A DNA stretch of 64,000 bases from Octopus sinensis. Lineage: Eukaryota. Location: NCBI RefSeq assembly GCF_006345805.1, contig NC_043002.1, positions 47,554,001 to 47,618,000 on the forward strand, read 5' to 3'. The position numbers were made by a program, and so were the translations under genes. The notes under the pieces are model-generated. The model was not told where the DNA came from. It did not search any database and saw only the letters and a program-made list of their open reading frames with translations. Shown one piece after another: positions 2,308-59,829 of this stretch. Within the stretch, counting starts at the first letter, position 1; every line of letters begins with the position of its first letter.

Positions 2308-2520
2308 CACAAGGTCCTCTCTGCTTTAGAATGATAGGGAGTTCGTTTTGGCAGGCATCTTTCTGAAGTTGGCATTCATTGTCGTATGTTACTCCATCAC
2401 TCCCACATATAGGGCGCAGCACCGGCTCACAAGAGGTGGGACACACACACTCCGCTACCCCCTGTCGATTGATGTTGCATCTTTCGTACTTTCTGCACTT
2501 GTTCGCACAAGGGTTGGTGC
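2308..2520 (-). CDS. Internal exon encoding a follistatin-like/Kazal module (FOLN+Kazal), agrin-like extracellular matrix protein
   Basis: Translation (G)TNPCANKCRKYERCNINRQGVAECVCPTSCEPVLRPICGSDGVTYDNECQLQKDAC-QNELPIILKQRGPC has all 10 Cys and the CGSDGxTYxNxC signature. Minus-strand acceptor is ...gttttgtcAG (plus 2521-2522 ct) and donor is GTAAGA (plus 2303-2307 cttac). Length 213 nt with symmetric phase 1-1, typical of one-domain-per-exon modular proteins. Agrin is the best guess; other FS/Kazal-repeat proteins are not excluded. Confidence 0.9.
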
Positions 2521-30870: not shown

Positions 30871-30889
30871 CTCACAACACTCACAGCAC

Positions 30890-31053
30890 TCACAACACTC
30901 ACGGAGTGGTTGGCGTTAGGAAGGGCATCCAGCTTTAGAAACATTGCCAGATCAGACTGGAGCCTGGTGCAGCCTTCTGGCTTCCCAGACCCCAGTCGAA
31001 CCGTCCAACCCATGCAAGCATGGAAAGCAGACGTTAAACGATGATGATGATGA
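30890..31053 (+). mobile_element. RTE-LINE 3'-end-derived element, young copy
   Basis: GTGGTTGGCGTTAGGAAGGGCATCCAGC...CATGGAAAGCAGACGTTAAACGATGATGATGATGAT, CpG-retaining with a (GAT)n tail. RTE assignment is from recalled family resemblance. Confidence 0.7.
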
Positions 31054-37849: not shown

Positions 37850-39025
37850 TCTGAATATACCAGAAGAGTTAAAAAGCTATGTAGATCTAAGTTGACTGAA
37901 AGAACCTGATTAGAGGCATCAATGCATATGACAGTCGGTGTGATACATTACTGTGCAGGAATTGTGGAATGTACAAAGGTTAACATGAGTAGAAAAATTA
38001 GGAAGGTAATTGCTACATTGAAAGGTTTTACTTAGGAAGGAAGATGGAAGAAGACTGGATGGAACAGAGGCTAGTTTGTGAAGGAGACCAAGTACTTGCA
38101 TGCTTATCTGAGGAATAGTGATGAAAGAATGTTGCAGGCTGCCCTGAGTGAGATGGTGATCAGTGACTATGGTTAGACCTGCCAGGAGTACAATATGAGA
38201 TCTAATAGAGAAAAGATCATCAACTGGAAAGAGGAAGTCCTTCACAGAGAGTTTTCTCAGCAAACATCAAATGAAGAATACAGATAGTAAAGGCATAACT
38301 TTTTTTTTCAAAGAAGTTGACAAAAGGACTGATTCTTCCTGTTCAAGAACAAGCTTTACGAACCAACTCAATCAAGTGTAACATTGATAAGACAGCAGTT
38401 TCATCATTGTGTAGACCATGTGGAAAATCATCTGAGACAGTTAGACATATAATTAGTGGATGCTCAAAACTGATCCAAAAGGAGTACAAAAACAAAGACA
38501 TGACAAAATGGCAATGTGAATACATTGGAAGTTGTGCAAGAAGTATGGGTTTAAATGTTCCAATAAGTGGTATGAGCCAATCTTTGCCAGTAGCAGAAAA
38601 CGATCAGGTGAAACTTACATGGGATATGCTAATGTATACAGACAAGAAGCTGTTGCATAACTGACCAGATATCACCCTCCTATGGAAAAAGTCCAAAGTT
38701 ATCCTTGCAGAATAGAGCATTGTAAAAGCAGAGGGCAAGAAAATTGGAAAGTACCAAGGTCTAGCACTGGAAGTGAAACGAATTGACAGAGCTGCAAAAG
38801 TGAGTGTGATATGTATTATGATTGATGCACTTGGAACCATCTCAAAGAGATAGGAGCAATATTCTGACTTCAAAAACTGCATATACCAGACTTCATAGGA
38901 AGTATTCAGTTGATAACATTACTTAAAACAGCTCAATTGTTGAGAAAAGTGTTACTTCTCTAAGCTGTACGATGAAGCTGAGATGTGACATAAGTAACTC
39001 AAGAAACGTTAAGTGAATAAATGAA
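37850..39025 (+). mobile_element. 5'-truncated, frameshifted R4/Dong-like (restriction-like endonuclease) LINE
   Basis: YTRRVKKL..SKL..IRGINA...GVIHYCAGIV, then QEQALRTN...CRPCGKSSETVRHIISGC (CCHC knuckle), then PDITLL (REL PD motif)...KYQGLALEV, then TAQLLRKVL-stop at 38961-63, ending in an AAT-repeat tail. Confidence 0.8.
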
Positions 39026-39269
39026 TAATAATAAAAATTGCTTCTAACATAGGCACAAGACCTGAAATTTTGAGGGAGGAAGTTATTTGATACTATCAAC
39101 TCCAGAACTTCACTTGCGCTTTAGTTTACCAGTCAAGTACTGGAATGAATAGCATTAGCTAACTCCTTCCCAAATTTTGGGCCTTGTGCTTATGTTTCAG
39201 ACAACAACAACAACAATAATAATGATAATAATGGTTTCAAATTTTGACATAAGGCCAGCATGAATAATT

Positions 39270-39470
39270 GGCTGAGAGATGGGAGCAGAAATCTCTGTAT
39301 GGTAAATATGTGGCCTGTTCCAAACAAGCTGATGTTGATGAAAAGCACACTCATCAGTGGCTACAAAGCTTGAGGTTAAAGGCAGGGACCAAAGGCTTCA
39401 TCTTTGTTGTTCGAGATCAAAGCTTATTTACTCAGGACTACCAAGCCAATGTGATGAAAAATGGAGTAGA
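39270..39470 (+). mobile_element. Second R4/Dong-like LINE fragment
   Basis: RWEQKSLYGKY...DVDEKHTHQWLQSLRLKAGTKGFIFVVRDQSLFT corresponds to the pre-CCHC region of the neighbouring element. Confidence 0.7.
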
Positions 39471-42400
39471 TGTAACTCCTTTGGATAAAAACAAAATGAT
39501 CTGGTACAAATTTCTCAAGACTGGAATGAACAAGTTTGAAAATTCTTTGAAGAATTTCTTCATATCTTTGATCGTCATTGCCAGTTAATGTTGCATTTTT
39601 TTTAGTATATCACTCCACATCTTTTGACAACCATTGTAGGCTTATTAGGAAAATCTCTAGGGCCACTAGTCTAGATTCCAGTCTTCAGTCTCATCTGCAA
39701 AGTGATCTTGGAAACATTTGGTGAATTGCTTTGGGTCTTGTATCATAAATGCTTTTCACTTGCTAAAAGACCTTGTTGAGATATTAATGAATAAATGGTA
39801 AAAAAAAAAGCACTAATCAAGCATCCTCTTTTAGCTTCAGTCTAACTTGACTTGATTGATCAATATTTTGTGCATGGAATAGATCATGACTTTAAACTGT
39901 GAATAGCTGGCTAATTAACCATTGGTCTAACAAATATTATATTCAAATAATATCTGTTACTTTCACCTTTATCAGAAATCCTTACTGATTTCCTCAGATG
40001 CAAGCTGTAACCAGCCAGCCAGTGTACAGAGATTCAGTTTATACAGGTTAAACAAGCTCTTATTGCAGAATTTTCCAGAGTAAATTGCCATGGTTTCTTA
40101 ATATTTATGCCTTCCTTTCTGATGTGTTTGTGCTTAAAAAAGCACTGCTTCTCCACAAGCTTGTGAAATCTGTTGCTGATCAAATAATATTAATAACCTT
40201 TTAGTGTCTGTCATATTTTACATATGTATGTCATTAATTTATTCATTTAACATCCATTTATCCATGCTAGTACAGCTTGGATAGAAATTGATTTTAAGGC
40301 AAGATTTTATAGTTGGATGTTCTTCCTGTTGTTCACCCTCAAAAGTCTTTCAAGCAAGGGATTTATATATTCCAAAGGTTCATAACCACACACACAGTGC
40401 TTGCTTATTCCATATAACTGTGTAATTAGTAAACAAGGGTACAACTCAAAATACATTTCTAATTATGAGTTACTGTATATTTATATTTATTACTTTAGTC
40501 ATTATATTTATAGTTAGAAAGCGTAGTGACAATTTTTAAGGAAAACACTTATTTAACCTTTACACTGTACTGTGTACACTGTGTAAATGCATACACAAGC
40601 ACAAACACACATACACAAATATGCAGACATATGCTCAAGGCTGTTTTCATTATAAAATTTATAAGATAAAAAGAGTTGCAAGATATTTCATATCACTTGC
40701 TATGAGAATATTTACAAATAAGAAAGGTAAATAATTCCAATATAACCATAAGCTCCATTCTTCAAGATTAAGTAAATCACCCAAACTATCTTTCATATAT
40801 AATTGAATAGTATAGTACAAGATAGATTTTTTCTCTTTTCTAAAGTACTGAAGTTTTATGTAATCAAAATAATGACAACATTTCTTAGATCTTGAGCACT
40901 TAGCAATCAATTATTTTCATAAACATAATTGCAAATGTAATATCATCAGATAAATAAAGACAAGCCAAATCACTCAACAGGCTGTATAAGGACATCAATA
41001 AAAAACCTACCATAGATTCCTATCTTAAAAATAACCTAAAGCTAAATAGAAATATTTAACCAGCTACAGTAAAATTTTAGTAATCTAAAACAGTTTATCA
41101 TAATATTTTTAAAGTAAACAAATGTACAGTGTTATGATAATGATAATGGTAATTAGTGATACCTGTGGTGTTTAATCATAGACCAAAAATAACCAGTTTC
41201 AATGAATTACATAAACACTGCTTTTGGAAATGCTCCTCAGCCAATACAATATAAAATTAATAGAATTAGAGTTTGACAATCAGTACAGTTTAAATTAAGG
41301 AAGGTAAAAACTATTTCTTGTAAGCTTCTTTAATCTGATCAGAAAATTTCCTATAATAAATAAAATAGGTTGGTGCCATGCAGTGCTTGTTCATTCTCTG
41401 GCTAATGAGGAAGAAAAAGTCGACAGAATAATTTTTTCTTTTTTTTTGTAAATACAATAATAAAATCTGGCATTTTTGTCAGTGTTTCAGCTGTTTCACA
41501 ATACTAGATATCATGGGAATTAAATTTATAATGATATTTCATTACTTTTGCCTCCAAATTCAGAATGAATATTAAAAATGAATAGAACAAAAATAAAATT
41601 ATAGAAGTGTCAAGATACCATTTCTAACAATGAATGAATGAAAGAAACTAAATATCATGTACATATGCAAATCCATGCTGAAAAGTAATTATAGTTACAT
41701 ACTAAAATCGTCTTTAAACAACATAACTTTTATATTGCACTCAGTAAGAGTTATCAAACAGAAATGCATATAGTTCATTCAGGACATAATACAAAAACAA
41801 AATATTTATAAGTATAAAATAGAATTTCAAATTTCTACAACTAATGGAAAAGGTAACTATCATATCTACGAAAGCATCCAAACTAATGCTATTATATTTT
41901 CTTCAAAGAGATGGACGTGTATGACATGAAATTTGAATAATTCTTTTCAATGCATCACAAGGTCATGAAATCCAGATATTGATTTCCTAAAGAGGTTAAT
42001 GGCTTCAGTTTCAAGGATGGATGCTATCCACCATTGAATATTGTGAGATATTCATATCTTTTCCAAAGTCATTACCAATGTAAGTAAAGGGAAATGCAAA
42101 TTAGCTGCTGTGAACTTTGATTACTAGAATTTACCTCTGATGTAGAGTATTGCTCCAGTAAATTAAATTATTCAATAGCATAATATTAGTTGTATATTCA
42201 AGACTTATATAATATTCATTCATCATTGGACTGTAGTTTATATCAATCTTTCATTTAAATGACATCCTTGGAGGTATAGTTTAGTGGGAAAGGAACCCAA
42301 TTCATGCTTAATTGATCAGTTAGCTATGAACCACTTCTTTTATTTCTCTCTCTCATATGATACACTCTTCATGGCAACTAAATTTATCCAACACGTCTAT

Positions 42401-43959: not shown

Positions 43960-44363
<404 letters not shown>

Positions 44364-44518
44364 TAGTTATCGCCATACTAATATGGCATTCTTATAAAAA
44401 TAAGAATAAAGCTGACCGCTTATTAGCTCCATGAGGCCATCGCCTTAAGTTAGCTATTTGATACACAAACTGTATCCATATAACCTTTGAACAAGGGAGG
44501 TCAGTCGCTCCACACTAC

Positions 44519-44578
44519 TTGGCCGGCAGCTACAGACGCGTTTCGGGTTATTGCCCCTTTTCAATGCAGCGTAGCCAA
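44519..44578 (-). ncRNA. Minimal type I hammerhead ribozyme, copy A
   Basis: UUGGCU-AC-GCUGCA-UUGAAAA-GGG-GCAAUAA-CCC-GAAA-C-GC-GU-C/UGUAGC-UGCC-GGCCAA. Predicted cleavage between 44535 and 44534. Confidence 0.8.
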
Positions 44579-44881
44579 ACCAGTAGGTGTCGCTTCCGAC
44601 AATCTCTGTTCAAAGGTTTTATTTACCTAGCTTCGGTGGAATACATCCACTTGTTTTCAATAATAGAAATATTAAAATTACTAAGTCTCTCTAAAAGAGA
44701 ACAACGGCAGCGTTCCCGGAAAATATTAGTTATCGCCATACTAATATGGCATTCTTATAAAAATAAGAATAAAGCTGACCGCTTATTAGCTCCATGAGGC
44801 CATCGCCTTAAGTTAGCTATTTGATACACAAACTGTATCCATATAACCTTTGAACAAGGGAGGTCAGTCGCTCCACACTAC

Positions 44882-44941
44882 TTGGCTGGCAGCTACAGAC
44901 GCGTTTCGGGGTATTGCCCCTTTTCAATGCAGCGTAGCCAA
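44882..44941 (-). ncRNA. Minimal type I hammerhead ribozyme, copy B
   Basis: UUGGCU-AC-GCUGCA-UUGAAAA-GGGG-CAAUA-CCCC-GAAA-C-GC-GU-C/UGUAGC-UGCC-AGCCAA. Predicted cleavage between 44898 and 44897. Confidence 0.85.
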
Positions 44942-46796
44942 ACCAGTAGGTGTCGCTTCCGACAATCTCTGTTCAAAGGTTTTATTTACCTAGCTTCGGT
45001 GGAATACATCCACTTGTTTTCAATAATAGAAATATTAAAATTACTAAGTCTCTCTAAAAGAGAACAACGGCAGCGTTCCCGGAAAATATTAGTTATTAGT
45101 ATGGCGATAACTAATATTTTCCGGGAATGCTGCCGTTGTTCTCTTTTAGAGAGACTTAGTAATTTTAATATTTCTATTATATGTATATAGTCTTCTCTAT
45201 GTAACAGTAAATATATATATACATATATATATCCACACACACACATGTATATACATATATGCATATATGTGTGTGTATATTTAATGACTGTCATATGAGA
45301 TTCCTTTAGCTGAAAGAAATTCTATGGATCTTTAATATAGTTATCCTATTATATAGTTATCTTATTATAATTTTCTTCATCTATTCAAGTTACATTTATA
45401 TATGTTTATGTTATATAAAGTGCAACATTTTGAAAATACATTTGATGTTTACTTAAAAAGATTTCTATATTTTTCTCAACTATAAGCTTTACTACTATGT
45501 TCATTAGATATTACATTTATTTCAGTATGTGAACCTAAGTTGTTGTTGTTGACATATTCTAGTCATAATCATTCTATCTGATTCTTTCACAAAATATATC
45601 CAAGATTACATTATCCGATGTACTCTTACTTTTTCATGATGGTAAGGTGTGGTTTTAGTGAATTTAGTTGCTATCTCCAATAAATTGAGCAACTGTATAC
45701 AGGCATGTTTGCTAGTTTGTGAAATTGCACTATTTTGTGTTGTGGTTGTTATAAATATGAACCTGTGGAAACTATTTTATATGAGGGTTGTCAAGGAGGG
45801 AAAGGGTCAAGTACCTACTTATATGTTTATTTCTTCAGTGCTCCTGAGAATGTTAGAAGGGAAAAAGCTATTCCAAACTATAAATCTGGTCCAATGCTTG
45901 TAGTAGAGCTGGATTTATTAAATGTACTCCAAGACCAAGTGGTTGTTTTAGACAAACTGATTGAGTCAGATATGCAAGAGCTCAGAATGCAACATACTGG
46001 AACAAATATCAAAAGAGATCTTGGCTGAGACACTAATTCCCCTAATCCACTGTCCTGGATTGCTACTTTATTTCATTAATCTTTAATGGATGAAAGACAA
46101 AGTTAACTTCAGTGGGATTGAAATACAGAGCACACTGAGCCAGAACAGATACTGCAAGGTATTTTGTCCTAAGTCTAAACTTCATCTTTGTCATATTAAT
46201 GTCCATTTTTCAATACTTGCATGAGTTGGACAGTATATTAAGACCAATTTTCCTACAGCCAGATGAATTTCTTGTTACTAGTCATCACTTGTTTCTAAGA
46301 CACGTAGAGAATATTGAAAATAAATTACACTGCTTGCACGACTCCACTAATTTGCTACCAAATTGTCTAAGCTCTAATTCCACTGGGATTGACTTAGTGT
46401 TTCATTTTACGGTATCTCAATAAAATAAGCATAAGTAATAACATACAAGGTGTCAAATTCAGTCAGATGCTTTCTCCATAAATTAGTGGTCTTGTACCAC
46501 AGTATAACAAAATCAATGTAATTCCCTACTCATAATGAAAATGGAACGGAAATCTAAAGACAACAACCTCCGCTTTGATAGTAATATATATAAAAAATTC
46601 TTGCACACAAATCTAACTGACATTGTTACCAACCAAACAACCAGCAAGCAGTATAATAGTAACATAACACAAGAGAAAAAAATAATGATTCCATCAGTCA
46701 CATTTGAAGTATATCAATACTGTTAATAAATATCCTTTGAAAATGAGTAATAAAATGTTGAGAAAGAAAAGATATTGCTGGCTTTAATCTTTAATA

Positions 46797-46835
<39 letters not shown>

Positions 46836-47594
46836 TATATATATGTTTGTATGTATAGATAAATCTATAGATATGTATGTATTTATTTATGTAGATATAC
46901 ACATTATATATTACACACATACACACATTTACAAACTATCAGTTGTCAGAAAACATTAATAAATTAACTGGCCATATAGTTAATCATGTTTTCAACATTA
47001 AATGTATAAAAGGTCAACTTCAATGTACATATATTTGGGAATAAAATCTACTCATTTAGACAGTTGAGCAAAAATTTAATGACGGAATGTTCAAAGGTTT
47101 GCATATTGCTAATAATGCTGCAGCATGGTAAAGACATATAAATCTTAATAGCTCAGTTCACCTAGCTATATAATGTTTGCATGCAATGGCATATGTCTTC
47201 ACCATAAGCAATGGCAGCAGCAATGTAAGTGGTATTTTGTTGGTGTCAAAGTCTGTTAAAATATTTCCATAAGGACAGCTTGGAGAAAGTTTGGTTGGAA
47301 GAGTCTTGCTTTTTAACTTTAAAATGAGATTTTTTTTATTCTTGTACTAGTTACGCTTATTAGAGTGAAACATTAATAGAACACCTTTCTCAGGTGTTTT
47401 AGTCAATAAAATTGGTCCTGGTACTTATTTCAGTTTCGTACCTATTTTACCAATTTCTGCATATTAAATTGCAAATTCTTACTACTTCAACATAAACTGT
47501 TTTGCATCGCTAAACAAAACCATAATCACAAGCACATGATCTAATGGCTTATGAGACCACATGTATATATATAACTATATATATAACACATGTG

Positions 47595-47704
47595 ATCATG
47601 TGACCGACCAGACTATCAGATGTTGTTACACATCGCTGGTCAGAACGTGTTTTGTATTGTTTTAGCCTTCAAATGATGTGACCCTTCTGGCTAGGTGAGC
47701 AGGC

Positions 47705-47705
<1 letters not shown>
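47595..47705 (-). mobile_element. SINE tail fragment
   Basis: Reverse homolog of 51860-51960 (CCAGCGATGT.TAACAACATCTGATAG). Confidence 0.6.
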
Positions 47706-47741
<36 letters not shown>

Positions 47742-47818
47742 ATATTTCAGGATTAAATAAAAATGCAGCAAACGGACAATATGACATACCTGTGTATGTA
47801 TGTATGTATGTATATATA

Positions 47819-47877
<59 letters not shown>

Positions 47878-48914
47878 TATTCAAAAAAGCATGTAGTAAA
47901 TAAACATACCTAGATGGAAAAGGAAAGAGTCAATCAAGAGAAAAATGAAAGCAGAATGTGTATGTCTGTATAACGACTTTGTCTAGTTGATGAGTATATG
48001 TTTGTGTGCGTGTGTGCATGTGTGTGTGTGTGTGTGTGTGGTATGTGTGTACAATAGCAAGAATATGTAGTTTAACTATTCAAACACTTTATGTAAGGAA
48101 AGAAACTCAGGAAGTGATAAGTTCAATTAGGGCTATTGGTTGGCAGTTATCACTGATACAATGAAACTTGGCAAAATACCAAAGTCTTTTGATGAACAGA
48201 GAAAACAATTTGAAACAATGACAGAGGAGTAACAATTATTTTAAAATATTATATTTAGAAATATTGTTGAATTGTTATCAGTGTCATAATGACAGTAATA
48301 TGTAACAGCTACATCATTTGAATACTCTTATGAAGTTTGTAGCAGAGGTTTTAGATGTGTTTAATTAGTCCAGTTATCAGGAGTAGGATCTAGCATTCCA
48401 GACTGTGAGTGAAGGTAGAGAAAGGAGGTGTGGTTGTCACTCTGGCTGCAATCCAGTAAAAGAAAATAATAAAGAAAACAATTGTTTCTAATTTGCAACC
48501 AAGCAACTTCACTTTCTCTTCTTTTCTTACTCTGAAATGAAGTGCAAGGACATAAAAATTGTGAGTTTTTTTATTCTTCATGATAATCAACTGAAAGGAT
48601 TTTTCTATGGCTCCTCTTATAGACTTAGTACCAGTTTCCCTAGGTTCTGGATTTTATTCTGTGAAGTTTGTAGATTACTCAATAAGGATTGCCAGTTTTG
48701 CTGCCAAAATTTGATAACACAATTAAAATACTACCAATCACACTCCTTCTATGTAGTAATTATATTGTTTGTTAAATGCAAATCTGTACTGAAAAATTAC
48801 AAGTTTTAACAGGTGTGTTAATGTGTAAATATTTAATATATACATAGACAACTATAAAAATATATCTTCTTCTACATGCTTCTCCATGTATTTCTCTAAT
48901 TCATTTTCTGTATC

Positions 48915-49335
48915 TTTTATCTTTTAGTTGTTTTAGTCATTGGACTGCAGCCAGTTTGGAGCGTTGCCTTGAAAGGTTTAGCTGAACAAATTGACCCCAA
49001 AGCTTATTATTTTTTTAAAGTCTGGTACTTATTCTATTGGTCTCTTTTGCTGAAATCACTAAGCTATAAGGACGTAAATAAACTAACAATGATTGTTAAT
49101 TGGTGGTGATAGTAAGTTGGGGACAAACAGGCAAAAAAGACACACACATACATGCACTTGCACACACACATATGTGTGTGTGAGGAGCTTTTGCATAGTT
49201 TCTGTTTACTAAATTCACTCATAAGTCATTGGCCAACCCAGGAGTGTTATAAAAGACACTTATTCAAGGTTCCATACAGTGGGACTGATTCTGAAACTAC
49301 ATGGATACTAAGCAAACTTCTTAATCCTACAGCCA
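48915..49335 (-). mobile_element. Full-length bipartite tRNA-head SINE with short internal (CA)/(TG) microsatellite
   Basis: Tail (TTTTAGTCATTGGACTGCAGCC...GGGGACAAAC), short microsatellite and head (GTTTCTGTTTACTAAATTCACTC...GTGGGACTGATTC...AAGCAAACTTCTT) are contiguous. Confidence 0.65.
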
Positions 49336-51164
49336 TGTCAACAATTTATTTGTTACTATTGTTGTTTAACATCATGTCAACCCAGACTCAATAGATTTAT
49401 GATCATAACATTCAACTCATGACTATCCAATCTATTGCTAACCCTCTAGGATTACATTAGACAATGTGTTTTGCTTTTTATTTGATGATAGAATATGAAC
49501 TGAAGGAACATGGTTGCCATTTTCAGCTGGTTGAGTAACTGCATAAATGTTGGATTATGTTATTTATTGATAAGTTGTCTTGTTCTATGAATTAGCTTAA
49601 AGTAACATATATTTCTATATTGTGTGTGGTTGTTGTTCTTGTTGAACTCCCAGACTAACTCTAATTGGGTAGAACTATGATCAAAAGTATTTCAACAATG
49701 ACCAAGCAATATTTTTTCCACATGCCTATTAATCAATATTACTCAATTTGATGACACTGAAGCCTGATGCAACCTTACAGCTTGATGGTTCCTTGTCAAA
49801 CAATCCTACTTATACCAGAATGGAAAGTAGATGTTAAATGATGATGATGATGATGATGTGTATTTCCTTATTTTTTGAAGACAATAAAGTGAGATTCAAG
49901 GGGATTTGGTTGCTTATTTTCCAAATTCAGTAATTATAGAGCATCTGCCTAATGACTGTAATTGTTGGTGCAATGTTGCTTAAAGTTTACTAATAAATTT
50001 CCTTTCATTTTATCGAAAATATTCATCTTATTCAGTCAAGTTTCCCATCTATTTAATATTCAAGTATGTTATGTATGCAAAATATGAAGTGTATATACAG
50101 TGTCCCTTCTAGTTGCATTTTTAGGAATATATTTAAACTTGTACAAGTTTTATGATTTGCATCTGTCACATGAATATGTAAATTTGTATAGAGGTAAGAA
50201 TCAGATTGAAACAAATCATTACCATAATGACATAAGAAATTTCAAAGATAAAAACATTAAATCAAAGGTTTCTACCATAACTAATGAAAGAACAAAACTA
50301 CAGATAAAATGTACAGTCACAAAAGATATTATACAAAGTATAACACAACTTATATAATGGACGTGATTTTTCAACACAAATGTTACATAAAACGCAAAGT
50401 AACTATATCATAGTCATGAATTAAAACTCAACACTAACTGCAAATTCTTAGAAATTAACACGGCATTTAAATCACACAACTAATTTGATAAAGGGTAAGA
50501 AGTTAAGTCCTTATGAACATAACTTGATACACTGAGTAGTTTTCCAAGAATAAACATAGTAAATGAGATTAAATCTTAATTAGCACAGTTCTGAGATAAC
50601 TCCAAGATTCATTTTCATGTTGAATAGCCAATTATCAACCAAAGAACTACAAACGACTAATAAAGAATTAGTTAATAAACCATAAATCAATACAACTAGT
50701 TTATAAGCAATATAATGCAAAAATGTGACAGCTTATAGTAACTAAAAATGAACTAAATGAATTTATTTTATTAACTAACACATCACACCTTACTCCATTT
50801 ATAGGCGAATATATTCCCAACACCATTATAAAAACATGAAATCTTAATAAAAATTACCACACGCACACATTGTCAGGAATTTGCAAAAATTATTTTCTCT
50901 ATTAAAGTAGTAAAGCATTTCACTATCATAGGCAACTATATCATTAATATTGAGTTGAAAGTTACATACAATCATTCAAACACATCGCCAATATCCATTT
51001 CCAGCATTACCCTAAAAGTGGTACTTAAAATCTACATTATCACAAAAAAAACCCCTCATTTGTTGATAATTCCAACATATTCTGAGTAGTATTTTACCTG
51101 TGGTACAAAGTTTTCCCAAATTACTTTATGCCTGAAGATCAAAAGTACTTATCATTTGTGATCT

Positions 51165-51166
51165 CA

Positions 51167-51203
<37 letters not shown>

Positions 51204-51331
51204 CACATATATATACATACATACATACACATATATATACATACATACATACACATACATACATACATATATATATACACACATACATACATACATATAT
51301 ATACATACATACATATATATACACACATATG

Positions 51332-51366
<35 letters not shown>

Positions 51367-51410
51367 TACTTATACATATATATATAGCTATACATATACA
51401 CATACTTATA

Positions 51411-51480
<70 letters not shown>

Positions 51481-51505
51481 TACATGTATATATAGGTATG
51501 AATAT
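51165..51505. repeat. Long compound (TA)n/(TACA)n microsatellite
   Basis: Read directly. Confidence 0.95.
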
Positions 51506-51714
51506 ACATATATAAAAGATCGATACTAATATAGAATTTACAGTTATATAACCTATACATAAAGAAAATATAATACAACAGCCATCGTTTTAAATTATAT
51601 ACAAATGGGTATCAGCAATAAAATTTTACTTCTAGCCTTATATCTCAGCCCATGTAAGAACACATACCATACCAGTTTACATTATACTCAAGCACACACA
51701 CACACACACACACA

Positions 51715-51960
51715 TAGCCTAGTTGTTAGAGTATTGAACTTATAATAGCTAGATCATTAGTTTGATTCCTGGACCAGGCAACACATTGTATTTTTGAGCA
51801 AAACACTTTGTTTAACATTGTTCCAGTTCACTCAAATGTAAATGATTAGGGAAATATTGGCCTGCTTGCCTACCCAGTGGGGTGGCATCATTCACATTGT
51901 GAAACACTTTGTAACCAGCGATGTATAACAACATCTGATAGCCTAGTTGATACCATGATA
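51715..51960 (+). mobile_element. tRNA-head SINE with CORE-like centre
   Basis: TAGTTGTTAGAG...AGTTTGATTCCTGG head, then TTGAGCAAAACACTT...CCAGTTCACTCA. Tail shared with 47.6 kb. Confidence 0.5.
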
Positions 51961-54900
51961 CTGTGATATATATTTATATACAGTATACAATAAAGAATTC
52001 GCAATAAAATTCATATTAAAATGAGCAGATACATTGCAATAGCATTTCATGATATATGAGAAATACAAATAAGTGCTTATACATAATGCTAACTATGGAA
52101 AATATCAATAAAAATGAAATAAAAATTCATATAACATATACTATAGTTACTGGAAAAAACCAGAGCCACTTATGATATTAATTCCAAAAATATTCTAGGT
52201 ATAAAATATCATCTGAACTTATCTCTTTGCCAAAATACTATTACAATACTATTTTGTATGATATATGAAACATATCTGGTAGTTTTCTGTAAAAAGTATT
52301 GAAAATAACATAAAATTTATTTTAAAAAAAATCAGACATTTATTTCCCACATGACAGCAGCAAATGTCATAATGTGTTATATATTGGTGAAATTTACACA
52401 ATTCTAAGCAGACTCTTAACAATTCAATTCTAGCAAAGACTACCTTATATTTTTATAAAGTTCTCAAATGCAAACTATGAATAGTTTGGAAAACTATATA
52501 ACTATTTCACACAAAATCATTTAAAAAAAATAGATAAAAAATATTAAAGTAGTAAAAATTGAATTCTAGTCCTTAAAAATCCTAATAGCTGAGAAATGAA
52601 CTACAACTTACATGGAATAACAGTAAAACTATAACTCCATACATTACAAAATTATTTGACTTGTTACACATGACTTGTGCCTTTATAGTTTTTACATGCA
52701 CCCAGAAAATATGTGAATGCCATTAGAGTGATAGAGAAAAATAAAAATTTCCTATTTTTAAATCCAGAATATATGCACACATATATGTTCATGTGTAAGT
52801 GAACATATTTACACTCACAGTTAAATGTATTGCATTGAAAGTAAATAAACTGGACAAAATGCTGAAGCTTCAGTACCCCAATAAGAGCTTCTATACAATG
52901 GTTTCTACAAGCACAATAGGGAAGGTTTGTAATAATACATTGTAAATATAAATGTTGTATACAGTTTGTATAAAACATAATATGTTGTATAACATATAAA
53001 TAAAAATTGTTATCTGAAAGTGAAAATTCAAGTTTTTCAGAACATTAATAGAGTTATGAAGGTTATGATGTGCTATGGTTTAATATATAAAAGTCAGAAT
53101 GAAATTAAAACAATATCACATCAATAAAACAGGGAAAATTAAAACAGGTAAATTCTTAATGAGACCCAGTTAAGTATAATGAATTTACATGTGGTTCCCT
53201 CTGTCTGTGGCTGTTAATAACAGAGAGATTACCGTCCCCTCACAAAACAAGACAAAATCCAAAATTTAAATTTGAAATTAAGGAATGGAAAGAAGATGCA
53301 TAGAGTTCATGTATTTAATTTCTTTACCCATTACAAAGCTCTTAGAATTTCCATTTAGAGGTTATCATGAATAGAACTATTTCATTCTTTTAAAAACATC
53401 TTCTGTATGATTTAATCTATAACTTATTAATTACAAAAAGAAACATTTCTTTATAATTCAAGATGAAATTAATTACAATCCGGGGAAATTCTTTGAATGT
53501 ATTTTTTGTTCTTCATAGAGCATAGGTAGTTTAGGAAGCAAAGGAAAGAGAGAACATTCTTAGTGTTTAGCTACAAAATAATAGCTGCTTCCAGAGGGAA
53601 CTTGATATTGAGAAAGTTCAGTTGTCCAAGAAAATCTAGTCACCACAATCTTGAAAATTATAAAAGATTTGGAACTTTGTACCAAATCTTTCTCTCTCAT
53701 TGCCTAAAATTTCATCTTATGCTCTCAATTTCTCCCCTTTAATATCTTTAATGCTTCAAAATAACAGATTCTGTATTTGTCTCGGTCTTACATTAAGTAT
53801 CCTTATATCACTTCCTTTTGTTATTTGCTTCCTATACTCCCTCCCTTTTCATTGTTGTCTTCTACATTGGTTTATTGAATTAATCTGGTGATGAGCACTA
53901 GAATCTGCTGAGTTAAATGAGCATATATTTATTAATATACTTGTGTATAGATATATGCATAAAAATATGCAATAAACATTTCCATGATTTTCTGTATAAA
54001 ATCATAAACACACATACAACACACACACACACACATACACACACACACACCCTGCTTCCATCTCTTAAATTCAATATAATAATGAGTTGGGATCTACTTC
54101 TTACAAAATAACTCTGGCTCTATCTATAATATTACTCTTCCAAGTTTCTTAACAGAAAATAATATCTATTGTATGAGTTAAGAGAATACTTTTAAAATGG
54201 TCTCTAAATTTTAAGAGATTTACATTAGGTAATTATATAAATGATACTAAATATCTCTGGTATCATCTGTTATCTAGCTACATTGAAGTATATTAAAGGA
54301 TTAAACACACAGAGCATTATGCTAGTTAGCTCTTTGACCAGTTAATTACACTGCATTTCTTATCTGGTTATTTAAATCTATTCTCTGAATCAATCTTTTA
54401 TTGCTTTTCACAGGAAATTAAGAAACAAATTTTGCATTAGAAACCTTTGATTCTAAGATAATCATAAGATCAATAATAATACCATTGCCTTGTGGTTGTG
54501 TATGTATATGTGTATGCAGGCTAAGTGAGTAAATGGATAAGATATTGGAGAAATAGTACATGTTTTGAGACTTAAAATCCATTACAAACATAATGACTTG
54601 CCTTCATTCACATAGTTGTTTGGAATAAGCGGGCTGATTTTTTAGGAGTATTACCTGTACATTGTATTGAAAGAAACTGGAGAAGTTATTTAATTTAGTT
54701 CATTTAATGCCAATGAGTCCAGTGGTAAGAACTTTTATAAAATTGGATCTTTATAGACAATACACACACACGCGATATATATATATATATATCAAAATGT
54801 ACACATTAAGGCAGACACATCATCATCATCATCATCATTTAACATTTGTTGTCATGCTGGCATGGACACAGCAACAAATATTTATAAATTAACAAAATAG

Positions 54901-55199
54901 AACATTTTTGAAATGATGAACAATGTTATTGTTTAGTCAAAGCTGGTTTATGATAAAAAGTTTTCTAAGTATGGCTATACCAGCATTTATTTTTCAGGCA
55001 GAGTATCTCCCATATATATATCCTGTGTATCCTTCCTTTTTTAAAAGAGGGTAGTATGTGACTGAGGGGTAATTTTGCTATTATTTCTAACAGGCTCAGT
55101 GACCATGTAAAGGATACCTCAATGGCACATGAAATGAACATATATTTAAGATGGTATTTCAAATAGGTTATTAAAACAAATTTAAGGTAAGTATATTTC

Positions 55200-55457
55200 G
55201 ATATTGACTACTGGAAATGCCACAGGAAAGAATTGCAAAACAGATTTTTCAAGTTGAGCCAACTGGCAAGGGACCTAGAGGTAGACCATAAGAAAGATGG
55301 TCGCATAATAACCATAGTCTCACTTGGTCATGCTTGGGAAACAAGTAGGAAACTTTAAAGACAGATAGTTCTGATAGGATCCTATGGAGAGGTGCCTGAG
55401 AGCTCTACTCCCATGACCCTCCCATGAACAGCGAGTAGTAAAAATGGATGGATGGAA
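55200..55457 (+). mobile_element. RTE-clade LINE 3' end fragment
   Basis: ERIAKQIFQVEPTGKGPRGRP*ERW...DRILWRG and an (ATGG)n tail. Confidence 0.65.
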
Positions 55458-58400
55458 CTAGTAAGTAAATAATTTCATGAGTGCATTCAATTTTCTGTAT
55501 CAGTTTATAAATTCGAATTTTGTAATTTCCAAATATGTTGAAGTAGAATTACTTTGTTAACTGAAGATATTGCTATTCATCTATTTCGATAACGACAATA
55601 ATTTTTTATGTCTTTTATATAATGCTATTTTATGATGCAGATGATGATTATGATAAACATTTTCATTGCTGAGATTCTGTTCTTTCATCCAGTCAGAAGC
55701 TGGTGCCAGTATTCTCAGTAGCAACACAGGGTAGTAAAAGCAAATTATTGTTATTACACACTCCATTATTAGTAGCAAAGAAATCCTGGCAAACAGAGCA
55801 GAATTATTTTACAGCTTTTAATTTGTGATGCTTTTTCAAAGGCCATGAGAGGAGGAGTGACTTACAACAGTTAACTTTAGAGATGACAATAGAGTCAACA
55901 ACAATATTAGTCTGATACTGTGAGAGAAATATTCTGTTTCTTAAAAAAGACAAAACAGAATAAACAAATATCACTTCTGGCATACATGAATGATTGATCA
56001 ACTGATTGATATGCTGGCTAAAGGCCATGTATTTATGTAATATAACACTTATAGGCTATATGAAAGTCTCTACCACAAAGATAGATCTTCCAATAATAGA
56101 TTCAGTATGGTCCCAAGAGGAAAACAACAAAATTATAGCAAATTTTGTCAGATTTAGTTGGAGACAGCAATTATATTTCCATTTATTGATAACTTTAATA
56201 ATGACTGGAAAATTACTATTGAATTTTGTGCAGATGTGAAGATGTGGAATGTATCAATGACTTGATAGCTGTCAGTGTTAATGTGCAAATTGAAACACAA
56301 ATATTAATGCTACAGAATGTAATGGAAAAAATGAGTATCAAAGAGGATTGGTTCCCAATGCTAAACCTTAATGTACACCATGCAATATAGTTAGTGTTTG
56401 TGATGTGGTCTCATTTAATAACAATTTGAGTGATATTTTAGATAAAAGGTGATTAATTCTGATAGTAAATTGGTCAGTCATTCAAAAGAATCTCACAATC
56501 AACTGAATAGTAATCAACATAGTAGATTGATACCTTGTTGTTGCTGTGCCAGCCCTGATGAAGCAGGCACAAGACCAAGGGGTTGTAGATAGATGTAATG
56601 TATCTATGACTGCATTATCTAATATGTCCTTTTTTAAGGCCCAAGGGCAATATTTGACAGTGATTTGGTTGACATTTCTAGTAGGTCAAGTGTCTACAGA
56701 GAAGCTCCATCATTGGGTCAGGTAGATTGATATTATAGGATATTTAGATCTCTTTATAAGTGCTGCTACTACTTAACTCCAGATTAACTTAACTTGGCTG
56801 AGAAGCCTTATAAGCCATGATAGGGCATTGCACAACTTGGATCACATTATTGAATGTTTTGAAGACTCTGGCAGTGAAATTTGATATAGATTTGGCTGCT
56901 AGTTCAAGTAGTTCAACTAGCTACATATAGGTTCTGTTGCAAAACTTGTGTAGCAATGACTTTATTAAAGGTTATTCTTCATAATTATTTTTATAAACAT
57001 TGGCATATAATGTTAGTGATACAACCTTATTAATCAGACTAAGGACCTGTTATTCTAAATACTTTTTTGATTTGATGATTTGCAGCCTTCACAATCAACC
57101 AATATATAAGAAATTCAATATTAGCTAAAATTTCCCAAATGTGTTTTATCATTTGGTAAATTATATTAATTATAGGAACTTTTGGCCCCCACTAATATGT
57201 TTTAGTAAATAAATCCATAATTCCAACAAAACAAGCAATATAGCAGGCATTAAAGTTTTGAAAAGAGGTGAATGAAATTTATATAGGAGTTAGTAAATAC
57301 CATTTTTTACTAACATGAAGACAACTTTCTTTTAACTTTTATGAAGCATTTGACTCAAATGAAAACAAAAAGTCAGCGAAATATGAATACCAATAACGAT
57401 TATTTAAATAAATTTGGTCATAGCTGCCCAATTTCTGACAGAAAGCTGGTACAAAGAGTTAATGGTGATGAACACTTATGGTGAAAGTAGACAAAAAAAT
57501 AACTTGCGAGGAGAGGGGATTTGGTCAAGGTATGAAAATGTTAAATCACAAAGATGAGATGGTGGAAATTGAAGATAGGCAGAAAGATTCAGCCTTATTA
57601 ATCGATCCAAACAACAATAATGAAGATGATAGTATAATAATAATTACACAGAAAGATTGAATCATTTGATATCAGTGATAACTGATAAACTTTTATACTA
57701 ATTAAAACAATAACTTGTTCAATATGCAGCAGATGTTTCTCCATGATATTGTTAACCTATTTGTTAATATCAAAACCAACTTTCACATTAATCTACCATT
57801 GCTATGGTGGTTATAACTGATGATTGTTTCTCTATAATAGACATATTTTGAGACATTTGAAGAACAAAATATTTCAAGGCAAAATGTAAAATATGGATGC
57901 TTCTGATCAACTGAAAGAACTTTCAATAATTGGTGCTTACTTCTCACTTCATTGAATGAGATGGATCAGACATAAGTATCATTCAGGATAGGATGCCTGT
58001 CTACCAAGGGAAAAAGAAATCCTAGGTATAAGAGGTACACAATTTTGACAGCTAAGTGAAGTGAGGCAATTTAGAATAAGACAATGTTTTGCTTGCCTAT
58101 AATAAATTTGAATTTATGACCTATGAGTAACTAGTTCAATATTTTCTTCATTCAGCTTTTCTGCTGCAACAATATTTCTATATTGCAGTATTCATTGTAA
58201 TCTCATCTGTAATATCAAATTTACATGATCTAATATAATCACTTTATTCCAAAGATTCATTCAACTACTTCATACTATCATATAGTACTTTAAAAGTTGT
58301 ATTGCATCATTCATGACCATAAATATAAAATGTCTGACTCATTAGTTTGTTTCATATTGCAACTTTCAAAGTTGTTTAATTGTTTGTCTTATTTGTTAGA

Positions 58401-59829
58401 AATATCACATCTCTAGTACAAAACATCTTCATATGTGGTTATAGTTTATTTCACAAAGCAAATTCCAAAGTTCTTCAGTTGTTTCTTGTGTTTATTAAAA
58501 ATTGCAATACTCAGTTCTACCTTTTAATACGAAACAAAATAATATTGTAGCTAGTGACTATGATCATTTTTTTTCACTCTCTAGTCAGAATAAAGTCAAT
58601 ACAACTCTTAATTCACATGATTTGCTTTAATGGCTTTCTGAATTGGTGTCAAAAACATTTCTTTTGTTATGGATATAACTTCTCGGTTTATTATAGAACC
58701 ACTTTGACATTTACACATATACATACTGGAATTTCTATTTGTGATTATGATTTTTATTTAATTTACTCTTGTGTAACTTTTCATAGTTTTCTTGAGTTTT
58801 AGGCTTTTTGCAAGTCTAACTTGGTATGTATCAAGTGTATGAAATTATTGTAGTCAACATTGTATACCAATAACCTAAGCAATATTATTCTATTTGCAAT
58901 TACTTCTATCTATTTCTCTGTTACTACTAAATCTTCACACCTTCATTATTATATTTATATCCCTTAGAACAGGAAATGGAATCGTTTATTTATCAGACTA
59001 AATGTTTTATAATAACTGATTTTATATCTGTGTTTGAAGTTCAAATTTTGCTCGGTTTTGACTCTGTCACACATCTACCTAGATTTTATAAAATACAAGG
59101 CAACCCATGACCTGTTGGGTCACCAATAATTCAAGATACTGGGAAAGTCTGAGATTCTCAGCAATAGGGTTTCATTTCATGTGCTTTTCTTCTTTCCAGG
59201 TTATTTTGCATGCTTTCAACGAATGTGACATCAAAATCACACGTAAAGGAAAGATTTGGTTGTTATTTCTTGCATGTAACAAGTATTTTGGATCCTTTAT
59301 CGCAACTAGCTGTGGTAGCAGGGTGTGCTTGAAGAAGCAACCAAATCTTTGGAGGTGAGATACGTTAAATGCACTTGAAAGAAACCTATAGAAGAAACTA
59401 TTTCACACCAAGGCTATGAACAGGTCCTTTACAAAATGTTTACTGTAATTTTCACTTAAAAATATTTTGCCCATCATAATGTGTCAAATGGAAAGGTTAG
59501 AGTTTCTTCCCTTCTAGGGTTAAGTTATTTTCAGAGTATTTTCCCATTATGCACTGTTTTGGGTATTTATACCCTCAATCTCTTAATAACCACTAGTTCG
59601 ATTTACACGAAACTTGGTTTATTCTATTTGTATTCAGATTTCAGGTTTTAGATCAATGTGAAAGGTCAATATCCATTCTTCAAAATATCTATTTAAAGTA
59701 TTTTATTCAAATGCTTCTTGCTATTGTTCATCTGCATTTCAGCTCTTGCTCATTGACAACAGTTACAAGTGTTCTAACATTCATAATAATCTGTGTTGCA
59801 ATGCTTCCTTTTCCTATATAATATTCCTG

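What the first reader, a model, noticed from the sequence alone, without database searches (positions are those of the whole stretch)
44535..44897. Host-sense orientation: the agrin-like pre-mRNA could release a 363-nt self-cleaved (circularisable) RNA
Seen: the two cleavage sites are exactly 363 nt apart and lie on the same (minus) strand as the Kazal exon, upstream of it. Established: non-LTR retrozymes are tandem units of a few hundred nt whose transcripts are cut to monomers and ligated into small circRNAs. Inference: host intron transcription could supply the precursor without an own promoter and would sever the intron co-transcriptionally, possibly affecting host splicing. This assumes the region lies inside the host transcription unit.
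Basis: partly seen in the sequence, partly recalled or inferred. Interest (0 to 1): 0.82.

Follow-up and report, generated by a model that had tools for sequence, protein, structure and literature searches.

The report
Two-copy hammerhead retrozyme insertion
A 363-base repeat present twice in a row carries a slightly unusual self-cutting hammerhead RNA motif in each copy, so it is an ordinary small "retrozyme" mobile element, and nothing in the window shows that it lies inside the neighbouring agrin-like gene.

Summary
The geometry is real. A 363-bp unit is repeated 2.03 times (44360-45096, 99% identical). On the minus strand each copy carries a type-I hammerhead-like motif. The predicted cuts fall after C44898 and C44535, which gives exactly the 363-nt RNA 44897..44535.

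The motif is not canonical. Its core reads UUGAAAA, a U3-A8 pair in place of C3-G8, and Rfam does not detect it. All other core positions fit. The layout also copies the Schistosoma extended hammerhead: a UAC bulge 6 bp from the core, a 4-bp helix II, a CAAUA loop and GAAACGCGUC. Helix III is the palindrome ACGCGU, so the ribozyme should work only as a dimer of two copies.

The excised RNA folds very stably (z about -6). An inverted 87-nt fragment at the 5' end, the partial-tandem layout and the neighbouring (TA)n tract match insertions made by Penelope-like elements.

Best reading: a non-LTR retrozyme, a new member of a known kind.

The host-intron idea is untested. The only recognisable exon, a Kazal exon at 2308-2520 on the minus strand, lies 42 kb downstream, and no exon was found upstream. 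Cleavage, circularisation and family copy number could not be tested.

The parts
44360..45096 (-). Direct tandem array of the 363-nt unit, 2.03 copies. Numbering from the cleavage site, it runs through unit positions 165-363, then 1-363, then 1-175.
   Evidence: TRF; the repeat finder D2; blastn of the unit against the window; base-by-base comparison with 2 differences.
44535..44897 (-). Predicted excised monomer: 363 nt, from U1.1 just after the upstream cut to C17 of the downstream hammerhead. This RNA is the candidate for circularisation.
   Evidence: Descriptor hits. Linear fold -122.4 kcal/mol, z=-6.7, with helix I closing the structure. Circular fold -117.4 kcal/mol, 63% paired, z=-6.0, 9 G-U pairs.
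44888..44939 (-). Hammerhead copy 1: GGC-UAC-GCUGCA-UUGAAAA-GGGG-CAAUA-CCCC-GAAA-CGCG-UC^UGUAGC-U-GCC. Helix I is 6 bp, helix II is 4 bp, and helix III is the palindrome ACGCGU. The cut falls between 44898 and 44897.
   Evidence: Comparison with the S. mansoni hammerhead sequences.
44525..44576 (-). Hammerhead copy 2: the same motif, but helix II is reduced to 3 bp by the C-to-A change at 44548. The cut falls between 44535 and 44534.
45094..45180 (+). Inverted 87-nt fragment of the unit (unit positions 152-238) abutting the 5' end of the array. With the first direct copy it forms a near-perfect hairpin of about 78 bp (45023-45180).
   Evidence: the repeat finder I1 and I9; blastn; hairpin fold -112.8 kcal/mol. 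Rfam mir-8 sub-threshold hit at 45066-45137.
45181..45189 (-). Upstream copy of the candidate target-site duplication TATATACAT (6-9 bp).
   Evidence: The sequence is low-complexity, so the evidence is weak.
44354..44362 (-). Downstream copy of the candidate target-site duplication TATATACAT. It overlaps the last 3 bases of the array.
44171..44363 (.). (TA)n microsatellite directly 3' of the element in the minus sense. It is the probable insertion target.
   Evidence: TRF. Microsatellite insertion bias of Penelope-like elements, Craig et al. 2021.
2308..2520 (-). Kazal/follistatin-type exon of the neighbouring gene: 213 nt, phase-symmetric, flanked by cag|...|gtaag. It is context only, 42 kb downstream of the element.
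   Evidence: Best solved-structure match is agrin 8s9p_A.

Best explanation
The locus is a young insertion of a non-autonomous 'non-LTR retrozyme'. This is a short non-coding retroelement thought to be mobilised by the reverse transcriptase and endonuclease of Penelope-like elements (PLEs).

Read on the minus strand, the insertion consists of:
- an inverted, 5'-truncated 87-nt fragment;
- two head-to-tail 363-nt units plus 11 nt;
- a position at the edge of a (TA)n tract.

Each unit encodes a type-I hammerhead of the extended Schistosoma/newt class. Its core carries the compensated pair U3-A8 instead of C3-G8. Its helix III is only the 6-nt palindrome ACGCGU.

The proposed mechanism is inferred from the sequence, not shown:
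1. A minus-strand transcript that spans both copies lets the two hammerheads pair through ACGCGU into a double hammerhead.
2. Both sites are cut, after C44898 and after C44535.
3. This releases one 363-nt RNA with 5'-OH and 2',3'-cyclic phosphate ends.
4. Helix I holds the ends side by side within a compact, 63%-paired fold.
5. A host RtcB-type tRNA ligase can close the RNA into a circle.
6. The monomeric circle cannot form helix III on its own, so it stays uncut.

Which promoter makes the precursor is unknown. It could be an internal promoter, read-through transcription, or a host gene.
For: **Tandem array.** 363 bp, 2.03 copies, 99% identical.

**Hammerhead topology.** The only two hits of a type-I descriptor in the window fall at equivalent positions of the two copies; 0.025 hits are expected by chance.

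**Core.** Every core position fits (U4 G5 A6 N7 A9, G10.1-C11.1, G12 A13 A14, A15.1-U16.1, C17) except positions 3 and 8. These changed together to U-A, which keeps the base pair. Perreault et al. 2011 report this covariation in natural hammerheads and cite in vitro activity (PMC3088659). Cervera & de la Pena 2014 found about 1,300 such motifs linked to PLEs in S. mansoni (PMC4209133).

**Features not in the descriptor that match the S. mansoni extended hammerhead**:
- the UAC bulge exactly 6 bp from the core, with a single U opposite it;
- a 4-bp helix II;
- loop 2 CAAUA versus CAAAUA;
- an identical GAAACGCGUC.

**Dimer.** Cofolding gives the intermolecular ACGCGU helix at -31.9 kcal/mol, against 2 x -12.9 for two monomers. 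The literature describes short palindromic helix III as the mark of dimer-dependent metazoan hammerheads.

**Monomer RNA fold.**
- z=-6.7 linear and -6.0 circular.
- The minus strand is 16-18 kcal/mol more stable than the plus strand.
- The fold contains 9 G-U pairs.
- The A/G difference at 44887/44524 keeps its pair with U.

**Insertion layout.** Inverted 5'-truncated copy, partial tandem and microsatellite target together match the PLE insertion signature (Craig et al. 2021).

**Other properties.** Unit size, GC content (40%) and lack of coding capacity fit published non-LTR retrozymes; the mussel family has 350-390 bp units.
Against: - No Rfam hammerhead model reports the motif, even at E<=10 on 101 bases.
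- Only two near-identical copies are available, so there is no covariation evidence for any helix.
- No related copy was found in the window, in two protein searches, or in metagenome, viral and prokaryote DNA scans. These collections are poor in animal genomes, so the negatives are weak.
- Helix II of copy 2 has only 3 bp.
- PLE-type minimal hammerheads cleaved poorly in vitro.
- The target-site duplication is low-complexity.
- No PLE reverse transcriptase was seen in the window.
- No expression data exist.
Confidence: 0.7

Rival explanations
1. The element sits in sense orientation inside a long intron of the agrin-like gene. The host pre-mRNA is the precursor. The intron is severed as it is made, a 363-nt circle is released, and host splicing or mRNA output is affected.
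For: - The element is on the same strand as the Kazal exon and upstream of it.
- The exon has an acceptor site, so at least one exon lies further upstream.
- None was detected in the 42 kb between the exon and the element (the last 3.7 kb, 40.7-44.3 kb, was only read by eye), which leaves room for a very long intron that spans the element.
- Intronic retrozyme copies are common in Xenopus.
- Sense intronic hammerheads exist in amniote genes such as RECK and C10orf118.
Against: - No exon or Pfam domain was found on the minus strand from 45200 to 64000, so nothing places the element within the gene.
- A single Kazal/follistatin module is not enough to call the gene agrin.
- The hammerhead depends on a dimer, so cleavage must wait for the second copy and may be slow.
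- Retrozymes are depleted from introns relative to intergenic DNA.
- From my own knowledge, not tested here: ribozyme cuts inside introns do not necessarily prevent splicing, because exons stay tethered to the polymerase.
Confidence: 0.3
2. The element is an inert relic. It derives from a retrozyme, but the U3-A8 core, the 3-bp helix II in copy 2 and the small copy number make this locus catalytically and transcriptionally silent. It would then be simply a decaying repeat.
For: - Rfam models do not score the motif.
- Copy 2 has lost one helix II pair.
- No other copy is present in 64 kb.
- Low in vitro activity was reported for PLE-type minimal hammerheads.
Against: - The two core changes compensate each other rather than looking like random damage.
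- Every other invariant position and the tertiary-contact elements are intact.
- The copies differ by only 0.55%, so the insertion is young.
- The U3-A8 variant is documented as natural and active.
Confidence: 0.25
3. The hammerhead look-alike is a chance occurrence within an ordinary local tandem duplication or satellite and has no relation to ribozymes.
For: - The descriptor was written after the motif had been seen.
- The core deviates from the consensus.
- Rfam is negative.
Against: - The chance expectation is 0.025 per window for the descriptor alone.
- Several features outside the descriptor match the Schistosoma ribozyme: the UAC/U bulge at 6 bp, the CAAUA loop and an identical GAAACGCGUC.
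- The fold z-score is -6 and closes on helix I.
- The insertion architecture is of the PLE type.
Confidence: 0.03

Closest known systems
Metazoan non-LTR retrozymes (Cervera & de la Pena 2020, NAR, PMC7229834), for example the Mytilus galloprovincialis family with 350-390 bp units
   Same: - Short tandem units of a few hundred bp with no LTR, primer-binding site or polypurine tract.
- No coding capacity and GC content below 50%.
- One type-I hammerhead per unit.
- A strongly self-paired monomer RNA whose ends are closed by helix I.
- Unit size (363 bp) within the mussel range.
   Different: - Only 2.03 copies are present here.
- The core is U3-A8, not C3-G8.
- Family copy number and expression as linear and circular RNA are unknown.
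- The host is unidentified.
Schistosoma mansoni Sm-alpha satellite hammerhead, the extended 'full-length' type-I hammerhead used for crystal structures
   Same: - Same order and sizes of parts: a distal helix I segment beyond the bulge, UAC bulge, 6-bp helix I, 7-nt core strand, 4-bp helix II, CAA(A)UA loop, GAAA.
- The same CGCGUC helix III and cleavage-site string.
   Different: - U3 and A8 replace C3 and G8, and position 7 is A rather than U.
- Loop 2 is one A shorter.
- The helix I and II sequences are unrelated.
- The surrounding repeat is unrelated.
Minimal hammerheads in the pseudo-LTRs of Penelope-like elements, including the U3-A8 variant family of the S. mansoni Cercyon element (Cervera & de la Pena 2014, PMC4209133)
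   Same: - U3-A8 covariation in the core.
- Palindromic helix III, which implies action as a dimer.
- Association with tandem and inverted insertion structures.
   Different: - Those motifs have a long helix II (7-8 bp), a short helix I (4-5 bp) and usually an extra nucleotide after A9.
- This motif has the canonical 6-bp and 4-bp helices, no extra nucleotide, and canonical tertiary-contact elements.
- No reverse transcriptase or endonuclease ORF lies between these repeats.
Newt satellite 2 and axolotl retrozyme hammerheads
   Same: - An unstable, short helix III that requires a double-hammerhead conformation in multimeric transcripts.
- The monomeric circle is protected from re-cleavage.
   Different: These are vertebrate families with a canonical C3-G8 core and very high copy numbers.
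Intronic hammerheads of amniote genes (RECK, C10orf118; Perreault et al. 2011, PMC3088659)
   Same: A hammerhead in sense orientation within, or possibly within, a host transcription unit.
   Different: - Those are single-copy, conserved monomeric ribozymes that are not parts of tandem retroelements.
- Intronic location is unproven here.

Membership tests
Hammerhead ribozyme, type I | Three helices around a junction, with helix I open (5' strand, core, helix II hairpin, GAAA, helix III, cleavage site, 3' strand) | tested here: met
   Descriptor hits at 44933-44892 and 44570-44529. The minimum-energy folds of 42-81-nt pieces and of the whole 363-nt monomer form helices I and II in this register.
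Hammerhead ribozyme, type I | Invariant core C3 U4 G5 A6 N7 G8 A9, then G12 A13 A14, then A15.1-U16.1 and H17 | tested here: inconclusive
   All positions fit except 3 and 8, which are U and A (core UUGAAAA). The change keeps the 3-8 base pair. It is documented as a natural covariation, and ribozymes with covarying 3-8 nucleotides were cited as active in vitro (PMC3088659; PMC4209133). The strict consensus is still not met.
Hammerhead ribozyme, type I | G10.1-C11.1 pair closing helix II at the core | tested here: met
   GGGG...CCCC in copy 1 and GGG...CCC in copy 2. The first pair is G-C in both copies.
Hammerhead ribozyme, type I | Elements for the helix I-loop 2 tertiary contact in the canonical metazoan form (bulge about 6 bp from the core; loop 2 of the CAAAUA type) | tested here: met
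   UAC bulge with a single U opposite it, exactly 6 bp from the core; loop 2 is CAAUA. S. mansoni has UAC + UACCAG + CUGAUGA + GUCC-CAAAUA-GGAC. The substrate-side single-U bulge of S. mansoni is recalled from memory.
Hammerhead ribozyme, type I | Score at or above the Rfam gathering threshold for a hammerhead covariance model | tested here: not met
   No hammerhead match at gathering score. None at E<=10 on 2.5 kb or on 101 bases.
Hammerhead ribozyme, type I | Site-specific self-cleavage | not testable with these tools
   This needs in vitro transcription of the dimeric unit.
Non-LTR retrozyme | Head-to-tail repeats of 150-450 bp, each with a type-I hammerhead | tested here: met
   363 bp, 2.03 copies, two hammerheads exactly 363 nt apart.
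Non-LTR retrozyme | Non-coding, no LTR, primer-binding site or polypurine tract, GC below 50% | tested here: met
   The unit ORF has no Pfam hit and no homologue. GC is 40.5%. There are no terminal repeats other than the tandem itself. Primer-binding and polypurine motifs were not searched for specifically.
Non-LTR retrozyme | Compact, highly self-paired monomer RNA | tested here: met
   z=-6.7 linear and -6.0 circular; 63% of bases paired.
Non-LTR retrozyme | Multicopy family dispersed in the host genome | not testable with these tools
   No other copy in the 64-kb window. The host genome cannot be searched. Public prokaryote, viral and metagenome scans were empty.
Non-LTR retrozyme | Accumulation of unit-length linear and circular RNA | not testable with these tools
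   No transcriptome data are available.
Insertion mobilised by a Penelope-like element | Partial tandem (pseudo-LTR) with an inverted 5'-truncated copy adjacent at the 5' end | tested here: met
   An inverted 87-nt fragment at 45094-45180 abuts the array, which starts at unit position 165 and ends at 175. The pattern is described in Craig et al. 2021.
Insertion mobilised by a Penelope-like element | Target-site duplication and microsatellite target | tested here: inconclusive
   TATATACAT (6-9 bp) is present at both edges, next to (TA)n. The sequence is low-complexity, so chance cannot be excluded.
Insertion mobilised by a Penelope-like element | Sequence relationship of the unit to the pseudo-LTR of an autonomous element with reverse transcriptase and GIY-YIG endonuclease in the same genome | not testable with these tools
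   No PLE ORF was recognised in the window. The host genome is unavailable.

The most novel reading that the evidence does not exclude
A canonical-architecture, extended type-I hammerhead that naturally uses a U3-A8 core pair is active in a mollusc-like genome. Because this two-copy retrozyme sits in sense orientation in a giant 5' intron of an agrin-like gene, host Pol II transcription is its precursor source. The gene would then produce a 363-nt ribozyme-made circular RNA, and its output would be modulated by intron self-cleavage.
Probability: 0.12. Interest if true: 0.55.

Novelty: new member of a known kind. Interest (0 to 1): 0.3.

Why it matters
It adds one more animal locus to the known class of hammerhead-bearing retrozymes. 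It is also a clean natural example of the U3-A8 core covariation set in an otherwise canonical extended hammerhead. Previously this variant was noted mainly in minimal PLE motifs and a few other cases. If the family is abundant and expressed in the host, it would be a convenient natural test of how the 3-8 pair affects catalysis and dimer-dependent processing. The suggested effect on the neighbouring gene would matter only if the element proves to be intronic and transcribed. Nothing here shows that.

Tried and rejected
**Rfam.** I searched at gathering score on the whole window, and at E<=10 on 2.5 kb and on 101 bases. There was no hammerhead or other ribozyme family. The only near-threshold hit was mir-8 at 45066-45137 on both strands. 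I rejected it as a real microRNA because it is the perfect palindrome at the head-to-head junction and the miR-8/200 seed is not matched.

**Alternative register.** I rejected a reading with helix I GGCUACG/UGUAGCU and core 'CUGCAUUGA'. It needs insertions inside the invariant core, and the folds choose the other register.

**Looking for related copies.** All searches were empty:
- protein-space search with the unit's 111-aa reading frame;
- protein-space search with the Kazal exon;
- exact and degenerate hammerhead patterns in metagenome, viral and prokaryote contig collections;
- blastn and nhmmer of the unit against the window.

**Looking for host exons.**
- Pfam scans of minus-strand reading frames (at least 30-35 aa, low-complexity ones removed) covered about 1-40.7 kb and 45.2-64 kb; 40.7-44.3 kb was only read by eye. 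They found only the Kazal exon.
- GC peaks upstream of the element correspond to no recognisable coding sequence.

**Other attempts.**
- Pfam on ten other long frames gave nothing above cut-off.
- Literature searches for the neighbouring SINE-like sequence, meant to identify the host, found nothing.
- The agrin chain could not be fetched for a tblastn against the window.
- The bacterial promoter/terminator scanner was not used because it does not apply to an animal genome.

Full report
**1. The observation**

The region holds a genuine tandem repeat. Tandem Repeats Finder reports 44360-45096, period 363, 2.0 copies, 99% matches and no indels. The repeat finder gives two copies spaced 363 nt apart. 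Compared base by base, the copies differ at only two positions: 44911 C versus 44548 A, and 44887 A versus 44524 G.

I wrote a generic type-I hammerhead descriptor. It requires:
- helix I of at least 5 bp;
- a core of CUGANGA, or UUGANAA with the 3-8 pair kept;
- helix II of at least 3 bp;
- GAAA;
- a hairpin or palindromic helix III;
- U-H at the cleavage site.

I ran it on both strands of the whole window. It hits only twice, both on the minus strand, at 44933-44892 and 44570-44529, with C17 at 44898 and 44535. First-order random sequences of the same composition give 0.025 hits per 64 kb.

The Kazal exon is also real and lies on the minus strand at 2308-2520. It is 213 nt, flanked by cag|...|gtaag, and scores Kazal_2 E=1.9e-12. 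It is downstream of the repeat in the minus sense, but 42,015 nt away.

**2. Anatomy of the ribozyme motif**

On the minus strand each unit reads:

GGC-UAC-GCUGCA-UUGAAAA-GGGG-CAAUA-CCCC-GAAA-CGCG-UC^UGUAGC-U-GCC

- Helix I is GCUGCA/UGUAGC, 6 bp including one G-U pair.
- Beyond it lie an internal loop (UAC on one side, a single U on the other) and further pairing (GGC/GCC and onward).
- Helix II is 4 bp in copy 1. The C-to-A change at 44548 reduces it to 3 bp in copy 2.
- Local and whole-monomer minimum-energy folds recover helices I and II in this register.

The core is not canonical: it is U3 U4 G5 A6 A7 A8 A9. Positions 3 and 8 pair with each other in the active structure, and both have changed here (C-G to U-A), which keeps the pair. 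All other invariant positions fit: U4, G5, A6, A9, G10.1-C11.1, G12, A13, A14, A15.1-U16.1 and C17.

This covariation is documented. Perreault et al. 2011 state that C3 and G8 covary to U3 and A8 in several natural hammerheads, and that such ribozymes had already been shown to be active in vitro (PMC3088659). Cervera & de la Pena 2014 retrieved about 1,300 U3-A8 motifs associated with Penelope-like elements in Schistosoma mansoni (PMC4209133).

Helix III is only A-C[GC]G-U, the 6-nt palindrome ACGCGU. A 2-nt loop cannot close a hairpin. Two copies, however, can pair through the palindrome. Cofolding two 42-nt motifs gives that intermolecular helix at -31.9 kcal/mol, against 2 x -12.9 for the monomers. 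The literature describes this as the hallmark of metazoan type-I hammerheads that act as dimers in multimeric transcripts.

**3. Is it homologous to known hammerheads?**

Rfam says no. No hammerhead family is reported at gathering score on the window. None appears at E<=10 on 2.5 kb or on 101 bases around copy 1. I count this as real evidence against simple membership.

Several features that were not part of my descriptor nevertheless match the extended S. mansoni hammerhead. Its enzyme strand, rebuilt from the primers printed in PMC3245953, is:

GGAUG-UAC-UACCAG-CUGAUGA-GUCC-CAAAUA-GGAC-GAAA-CGCC

A natural Sm-alpha copy (AF036740, printed in PMC5666329) ends ...GUCC-CAAAUA-GGAC-GAAACGCGUC.

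The window motif shares with these sequences:
- the same UAC bulge exactly 6 bp from the core;
- a 4-bp helix II;
- a CAAUA loop, one A shorter than CAAAUA;
- the identical ten bases GAAACGCGUC.

That the Schistosoma substrate strand also has a single bulged U is my recollection, not a tool result. Taken together, I regard derivation from the canonical metazoan type-I hammerhead as very likely. Present-day catalytic competence is plausible but unproven.

**4. The RNA product**

- The 363-nt monomer folds at -122.4 kcal/mol, with z=-6.7 against dinucleotide shuffles.
- As a circle it folds at -117.4 kcal/mol, z=-6.0, with 63% of bases paired and 9 G-U pairs.
- The minimum-energy structure closes on helix I, so the two cleavage ends lie side by side.
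- The plus strand is 16-18 kcal/mol less stable, although its z-score is similar.
- The A/G difference at 44887/44524 pairs with a U in both copies (A-U versus G-U). It is neutral for the minus-strand RNA but would be an A-C mismatch on the plus strand. This is a single observation and counts only as a hint.

**5. Architecture of the insertion**

blastn of the unit against the window shows that the array runs through unit positions 165-363, 1-363 and 1-175, which is two units plus 11 nt. An 87-nt piece (unit positions 152-238) lies in inverted orientation at 45094-45180, directly 5' of the array in the minus sense.

With the first direct copy this inverted piece makes a near-perfect hairpin of about 78 bp (-112.8 kcal/mol). 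That hairpin explains the sub-threshold Rfam mir-8 hits on both strands (45.5 and 43.5 bits against a threshold of 47). The miR-8 seed is not matched.

The 3' end abuts a (TA)n microsatellite at 44171-44363. Both edges carry TATATACAT, of which 6-9 bp could be a target-site duplication, but the sequence is low-complexity.

Craig et al. [quoted passage not shown] The unit has no coding signal:
- no Pfam hit;
- no homologue;
- GC content of 40%.

The 0.55% divergence between copies suggests a young insertion.

**6. Most likely mechanism**

What is shown: the sequence, the repeat structure, the predicted folds and the matches to published motifs.

What is inferred:
1. A minus-strand transcript crossing both copies forms a double hammerhead through ACGCGU.
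2. It cuts after C44898 and C44535.
3. It releases one 363-nt RNA with 5'-OH and 2',3'-cyclic phosphate ends.
4. A host tRNA ligase of the RtcB type circularises it. Cervera & de la Pena 2020 conclude this for animal retrozymes (PMC7229834).
5. The monomeric circle lacks a partner for helix III and is spared re-cleavage.
6. A PLE reverse transcriptase copying such RNA for more than one unit length would explain the 2.03-copy tandem and the inverted fragment.

The promoter is unknown.

**7. The host-gene idea**

Only one coding exon is recognisable in the window. Pfam scans of minus-strand reading frames (at least 30-35 aa) gave only the Kazal hit in about 1-40.7 kb and nothing between 45.2 and 64 kb. 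The stretch 40.7-44.3 kb was only read by eye.

The exon's best solved-structure match is agrin (8s9p_A). That score sums nine follistatin-like repeats, and follistatin and ovomucoid also match. 'Agrin-like' is therefore reasonable but not established.

The exon has an acceptor site, so an upstream exon must exist. Whether it lies beyond 45.2 kb, which would make the element intronic, or between 2.5 and 44.3 kb cannot be told.

Intronic retrozymes would not be exceptional. In Xenopus 42-44% of copies overlap introns, although they are depleted there relative to intergenic DNA. Because the ribozyme depends on a dimer, prompt co-transcriptional severing is not assured.

**8. Comparison, novelty and verdict**

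The locus works like a metazoan non-LTR retrozyme and passes most of the retrozyme tests that could be run here; Rfam recognition failed, and the strict core and the target-site duplication were inconclusive. Three tests could not be run: multicopy family, circular RNA and cleavage. Its distinguishing detail is the U3-A8 core in an otherwise canonical extended hammerhead, a combination that Rfam misses.

I found no report of retrozymes with this core. I also found no record of the host lineage: the SINE-like neighbour and the base composition remind me of cephalopod genomes, but that is memory only and untested.

Verdict: a new member of a known kind, of modest interest.

Noticed in passing
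window 45023-45180: The head-to-head junction of the inverted fragment and the first direct copy forms a near-perfect hairpin of about 78 bp (-112.8 kcal/mol). Rfam mir-8 scores 45.5 and 43.5 bits on the two strands, just under the 47-bit threshold, but the miR-8 seed is not matched. If transcribed, such long double-stranded RNA would be a substrate for Dicer or ADAR.
   Followed up: partly
window 43986-44170; also 30885-31041 and 61658-61720: A GC-rich SINE-like dispersed repeat (...GGCATCCAGCTGTAGAAAC...CCATGCTAGCATGGAAAGCGGACG...) followed by a GAT/GAA-rich tail. It lies immediately beyond the (TA)n tract next to the retrozyme. The second copy is 84% identical and on the opposite strand. 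From memory it resembles abundant cephalopod SINEs; a literature search for the sequence found nothing.
   Followed up: partly
window 44981-44990 and 44618-44627 (minus strand): Each unit contains AG|GUAAAU, which resembles a 5' splice site, overlapping an AAUAAA poly(A) hexamer. If the element were intronic, these could matter as much for host RNA processing as the ribozyme does. Such strings are common in AT-rich DNA.
   Followed up: no
window 12922-13257 (minus strand): A remnant of a mariner/Tc1-type transposase (...HHPPYSPDLAPTDYYFF...). DDE_3 scores 21.3 bits, below the Pfam cut-off of 28.6.
   Followed up: partly
window 15590-16054 (+); 38299-38661 (+); 39268-39585 (+): Reading frames that look like C-terminal parts of LINE-type reverse transcriptase proteins (for example ...PHLEFASPVWNPY...). 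They have no Pfam hit above threshold and are probably decayed non-LTR retrotransposon fragments. None looks like a Penelope-like element.
   Followed up: partly
window 2308-2520 (minus strand): The Kazal/follistatin exon is 213 nt with symmetric phase (1-1), as is typical of shuffled extracellular modules. It is the only Pfam-recognisable exon among the minus-strand frames scanned, which implies very long introns or a gene edge.
   Followed up: yes
whole window: GC content is 30.5%, with very many (TA)n, (CA)n and (TATG)n-type microsatellites that dominate the six-frame ORF lists.
   Followed up: no
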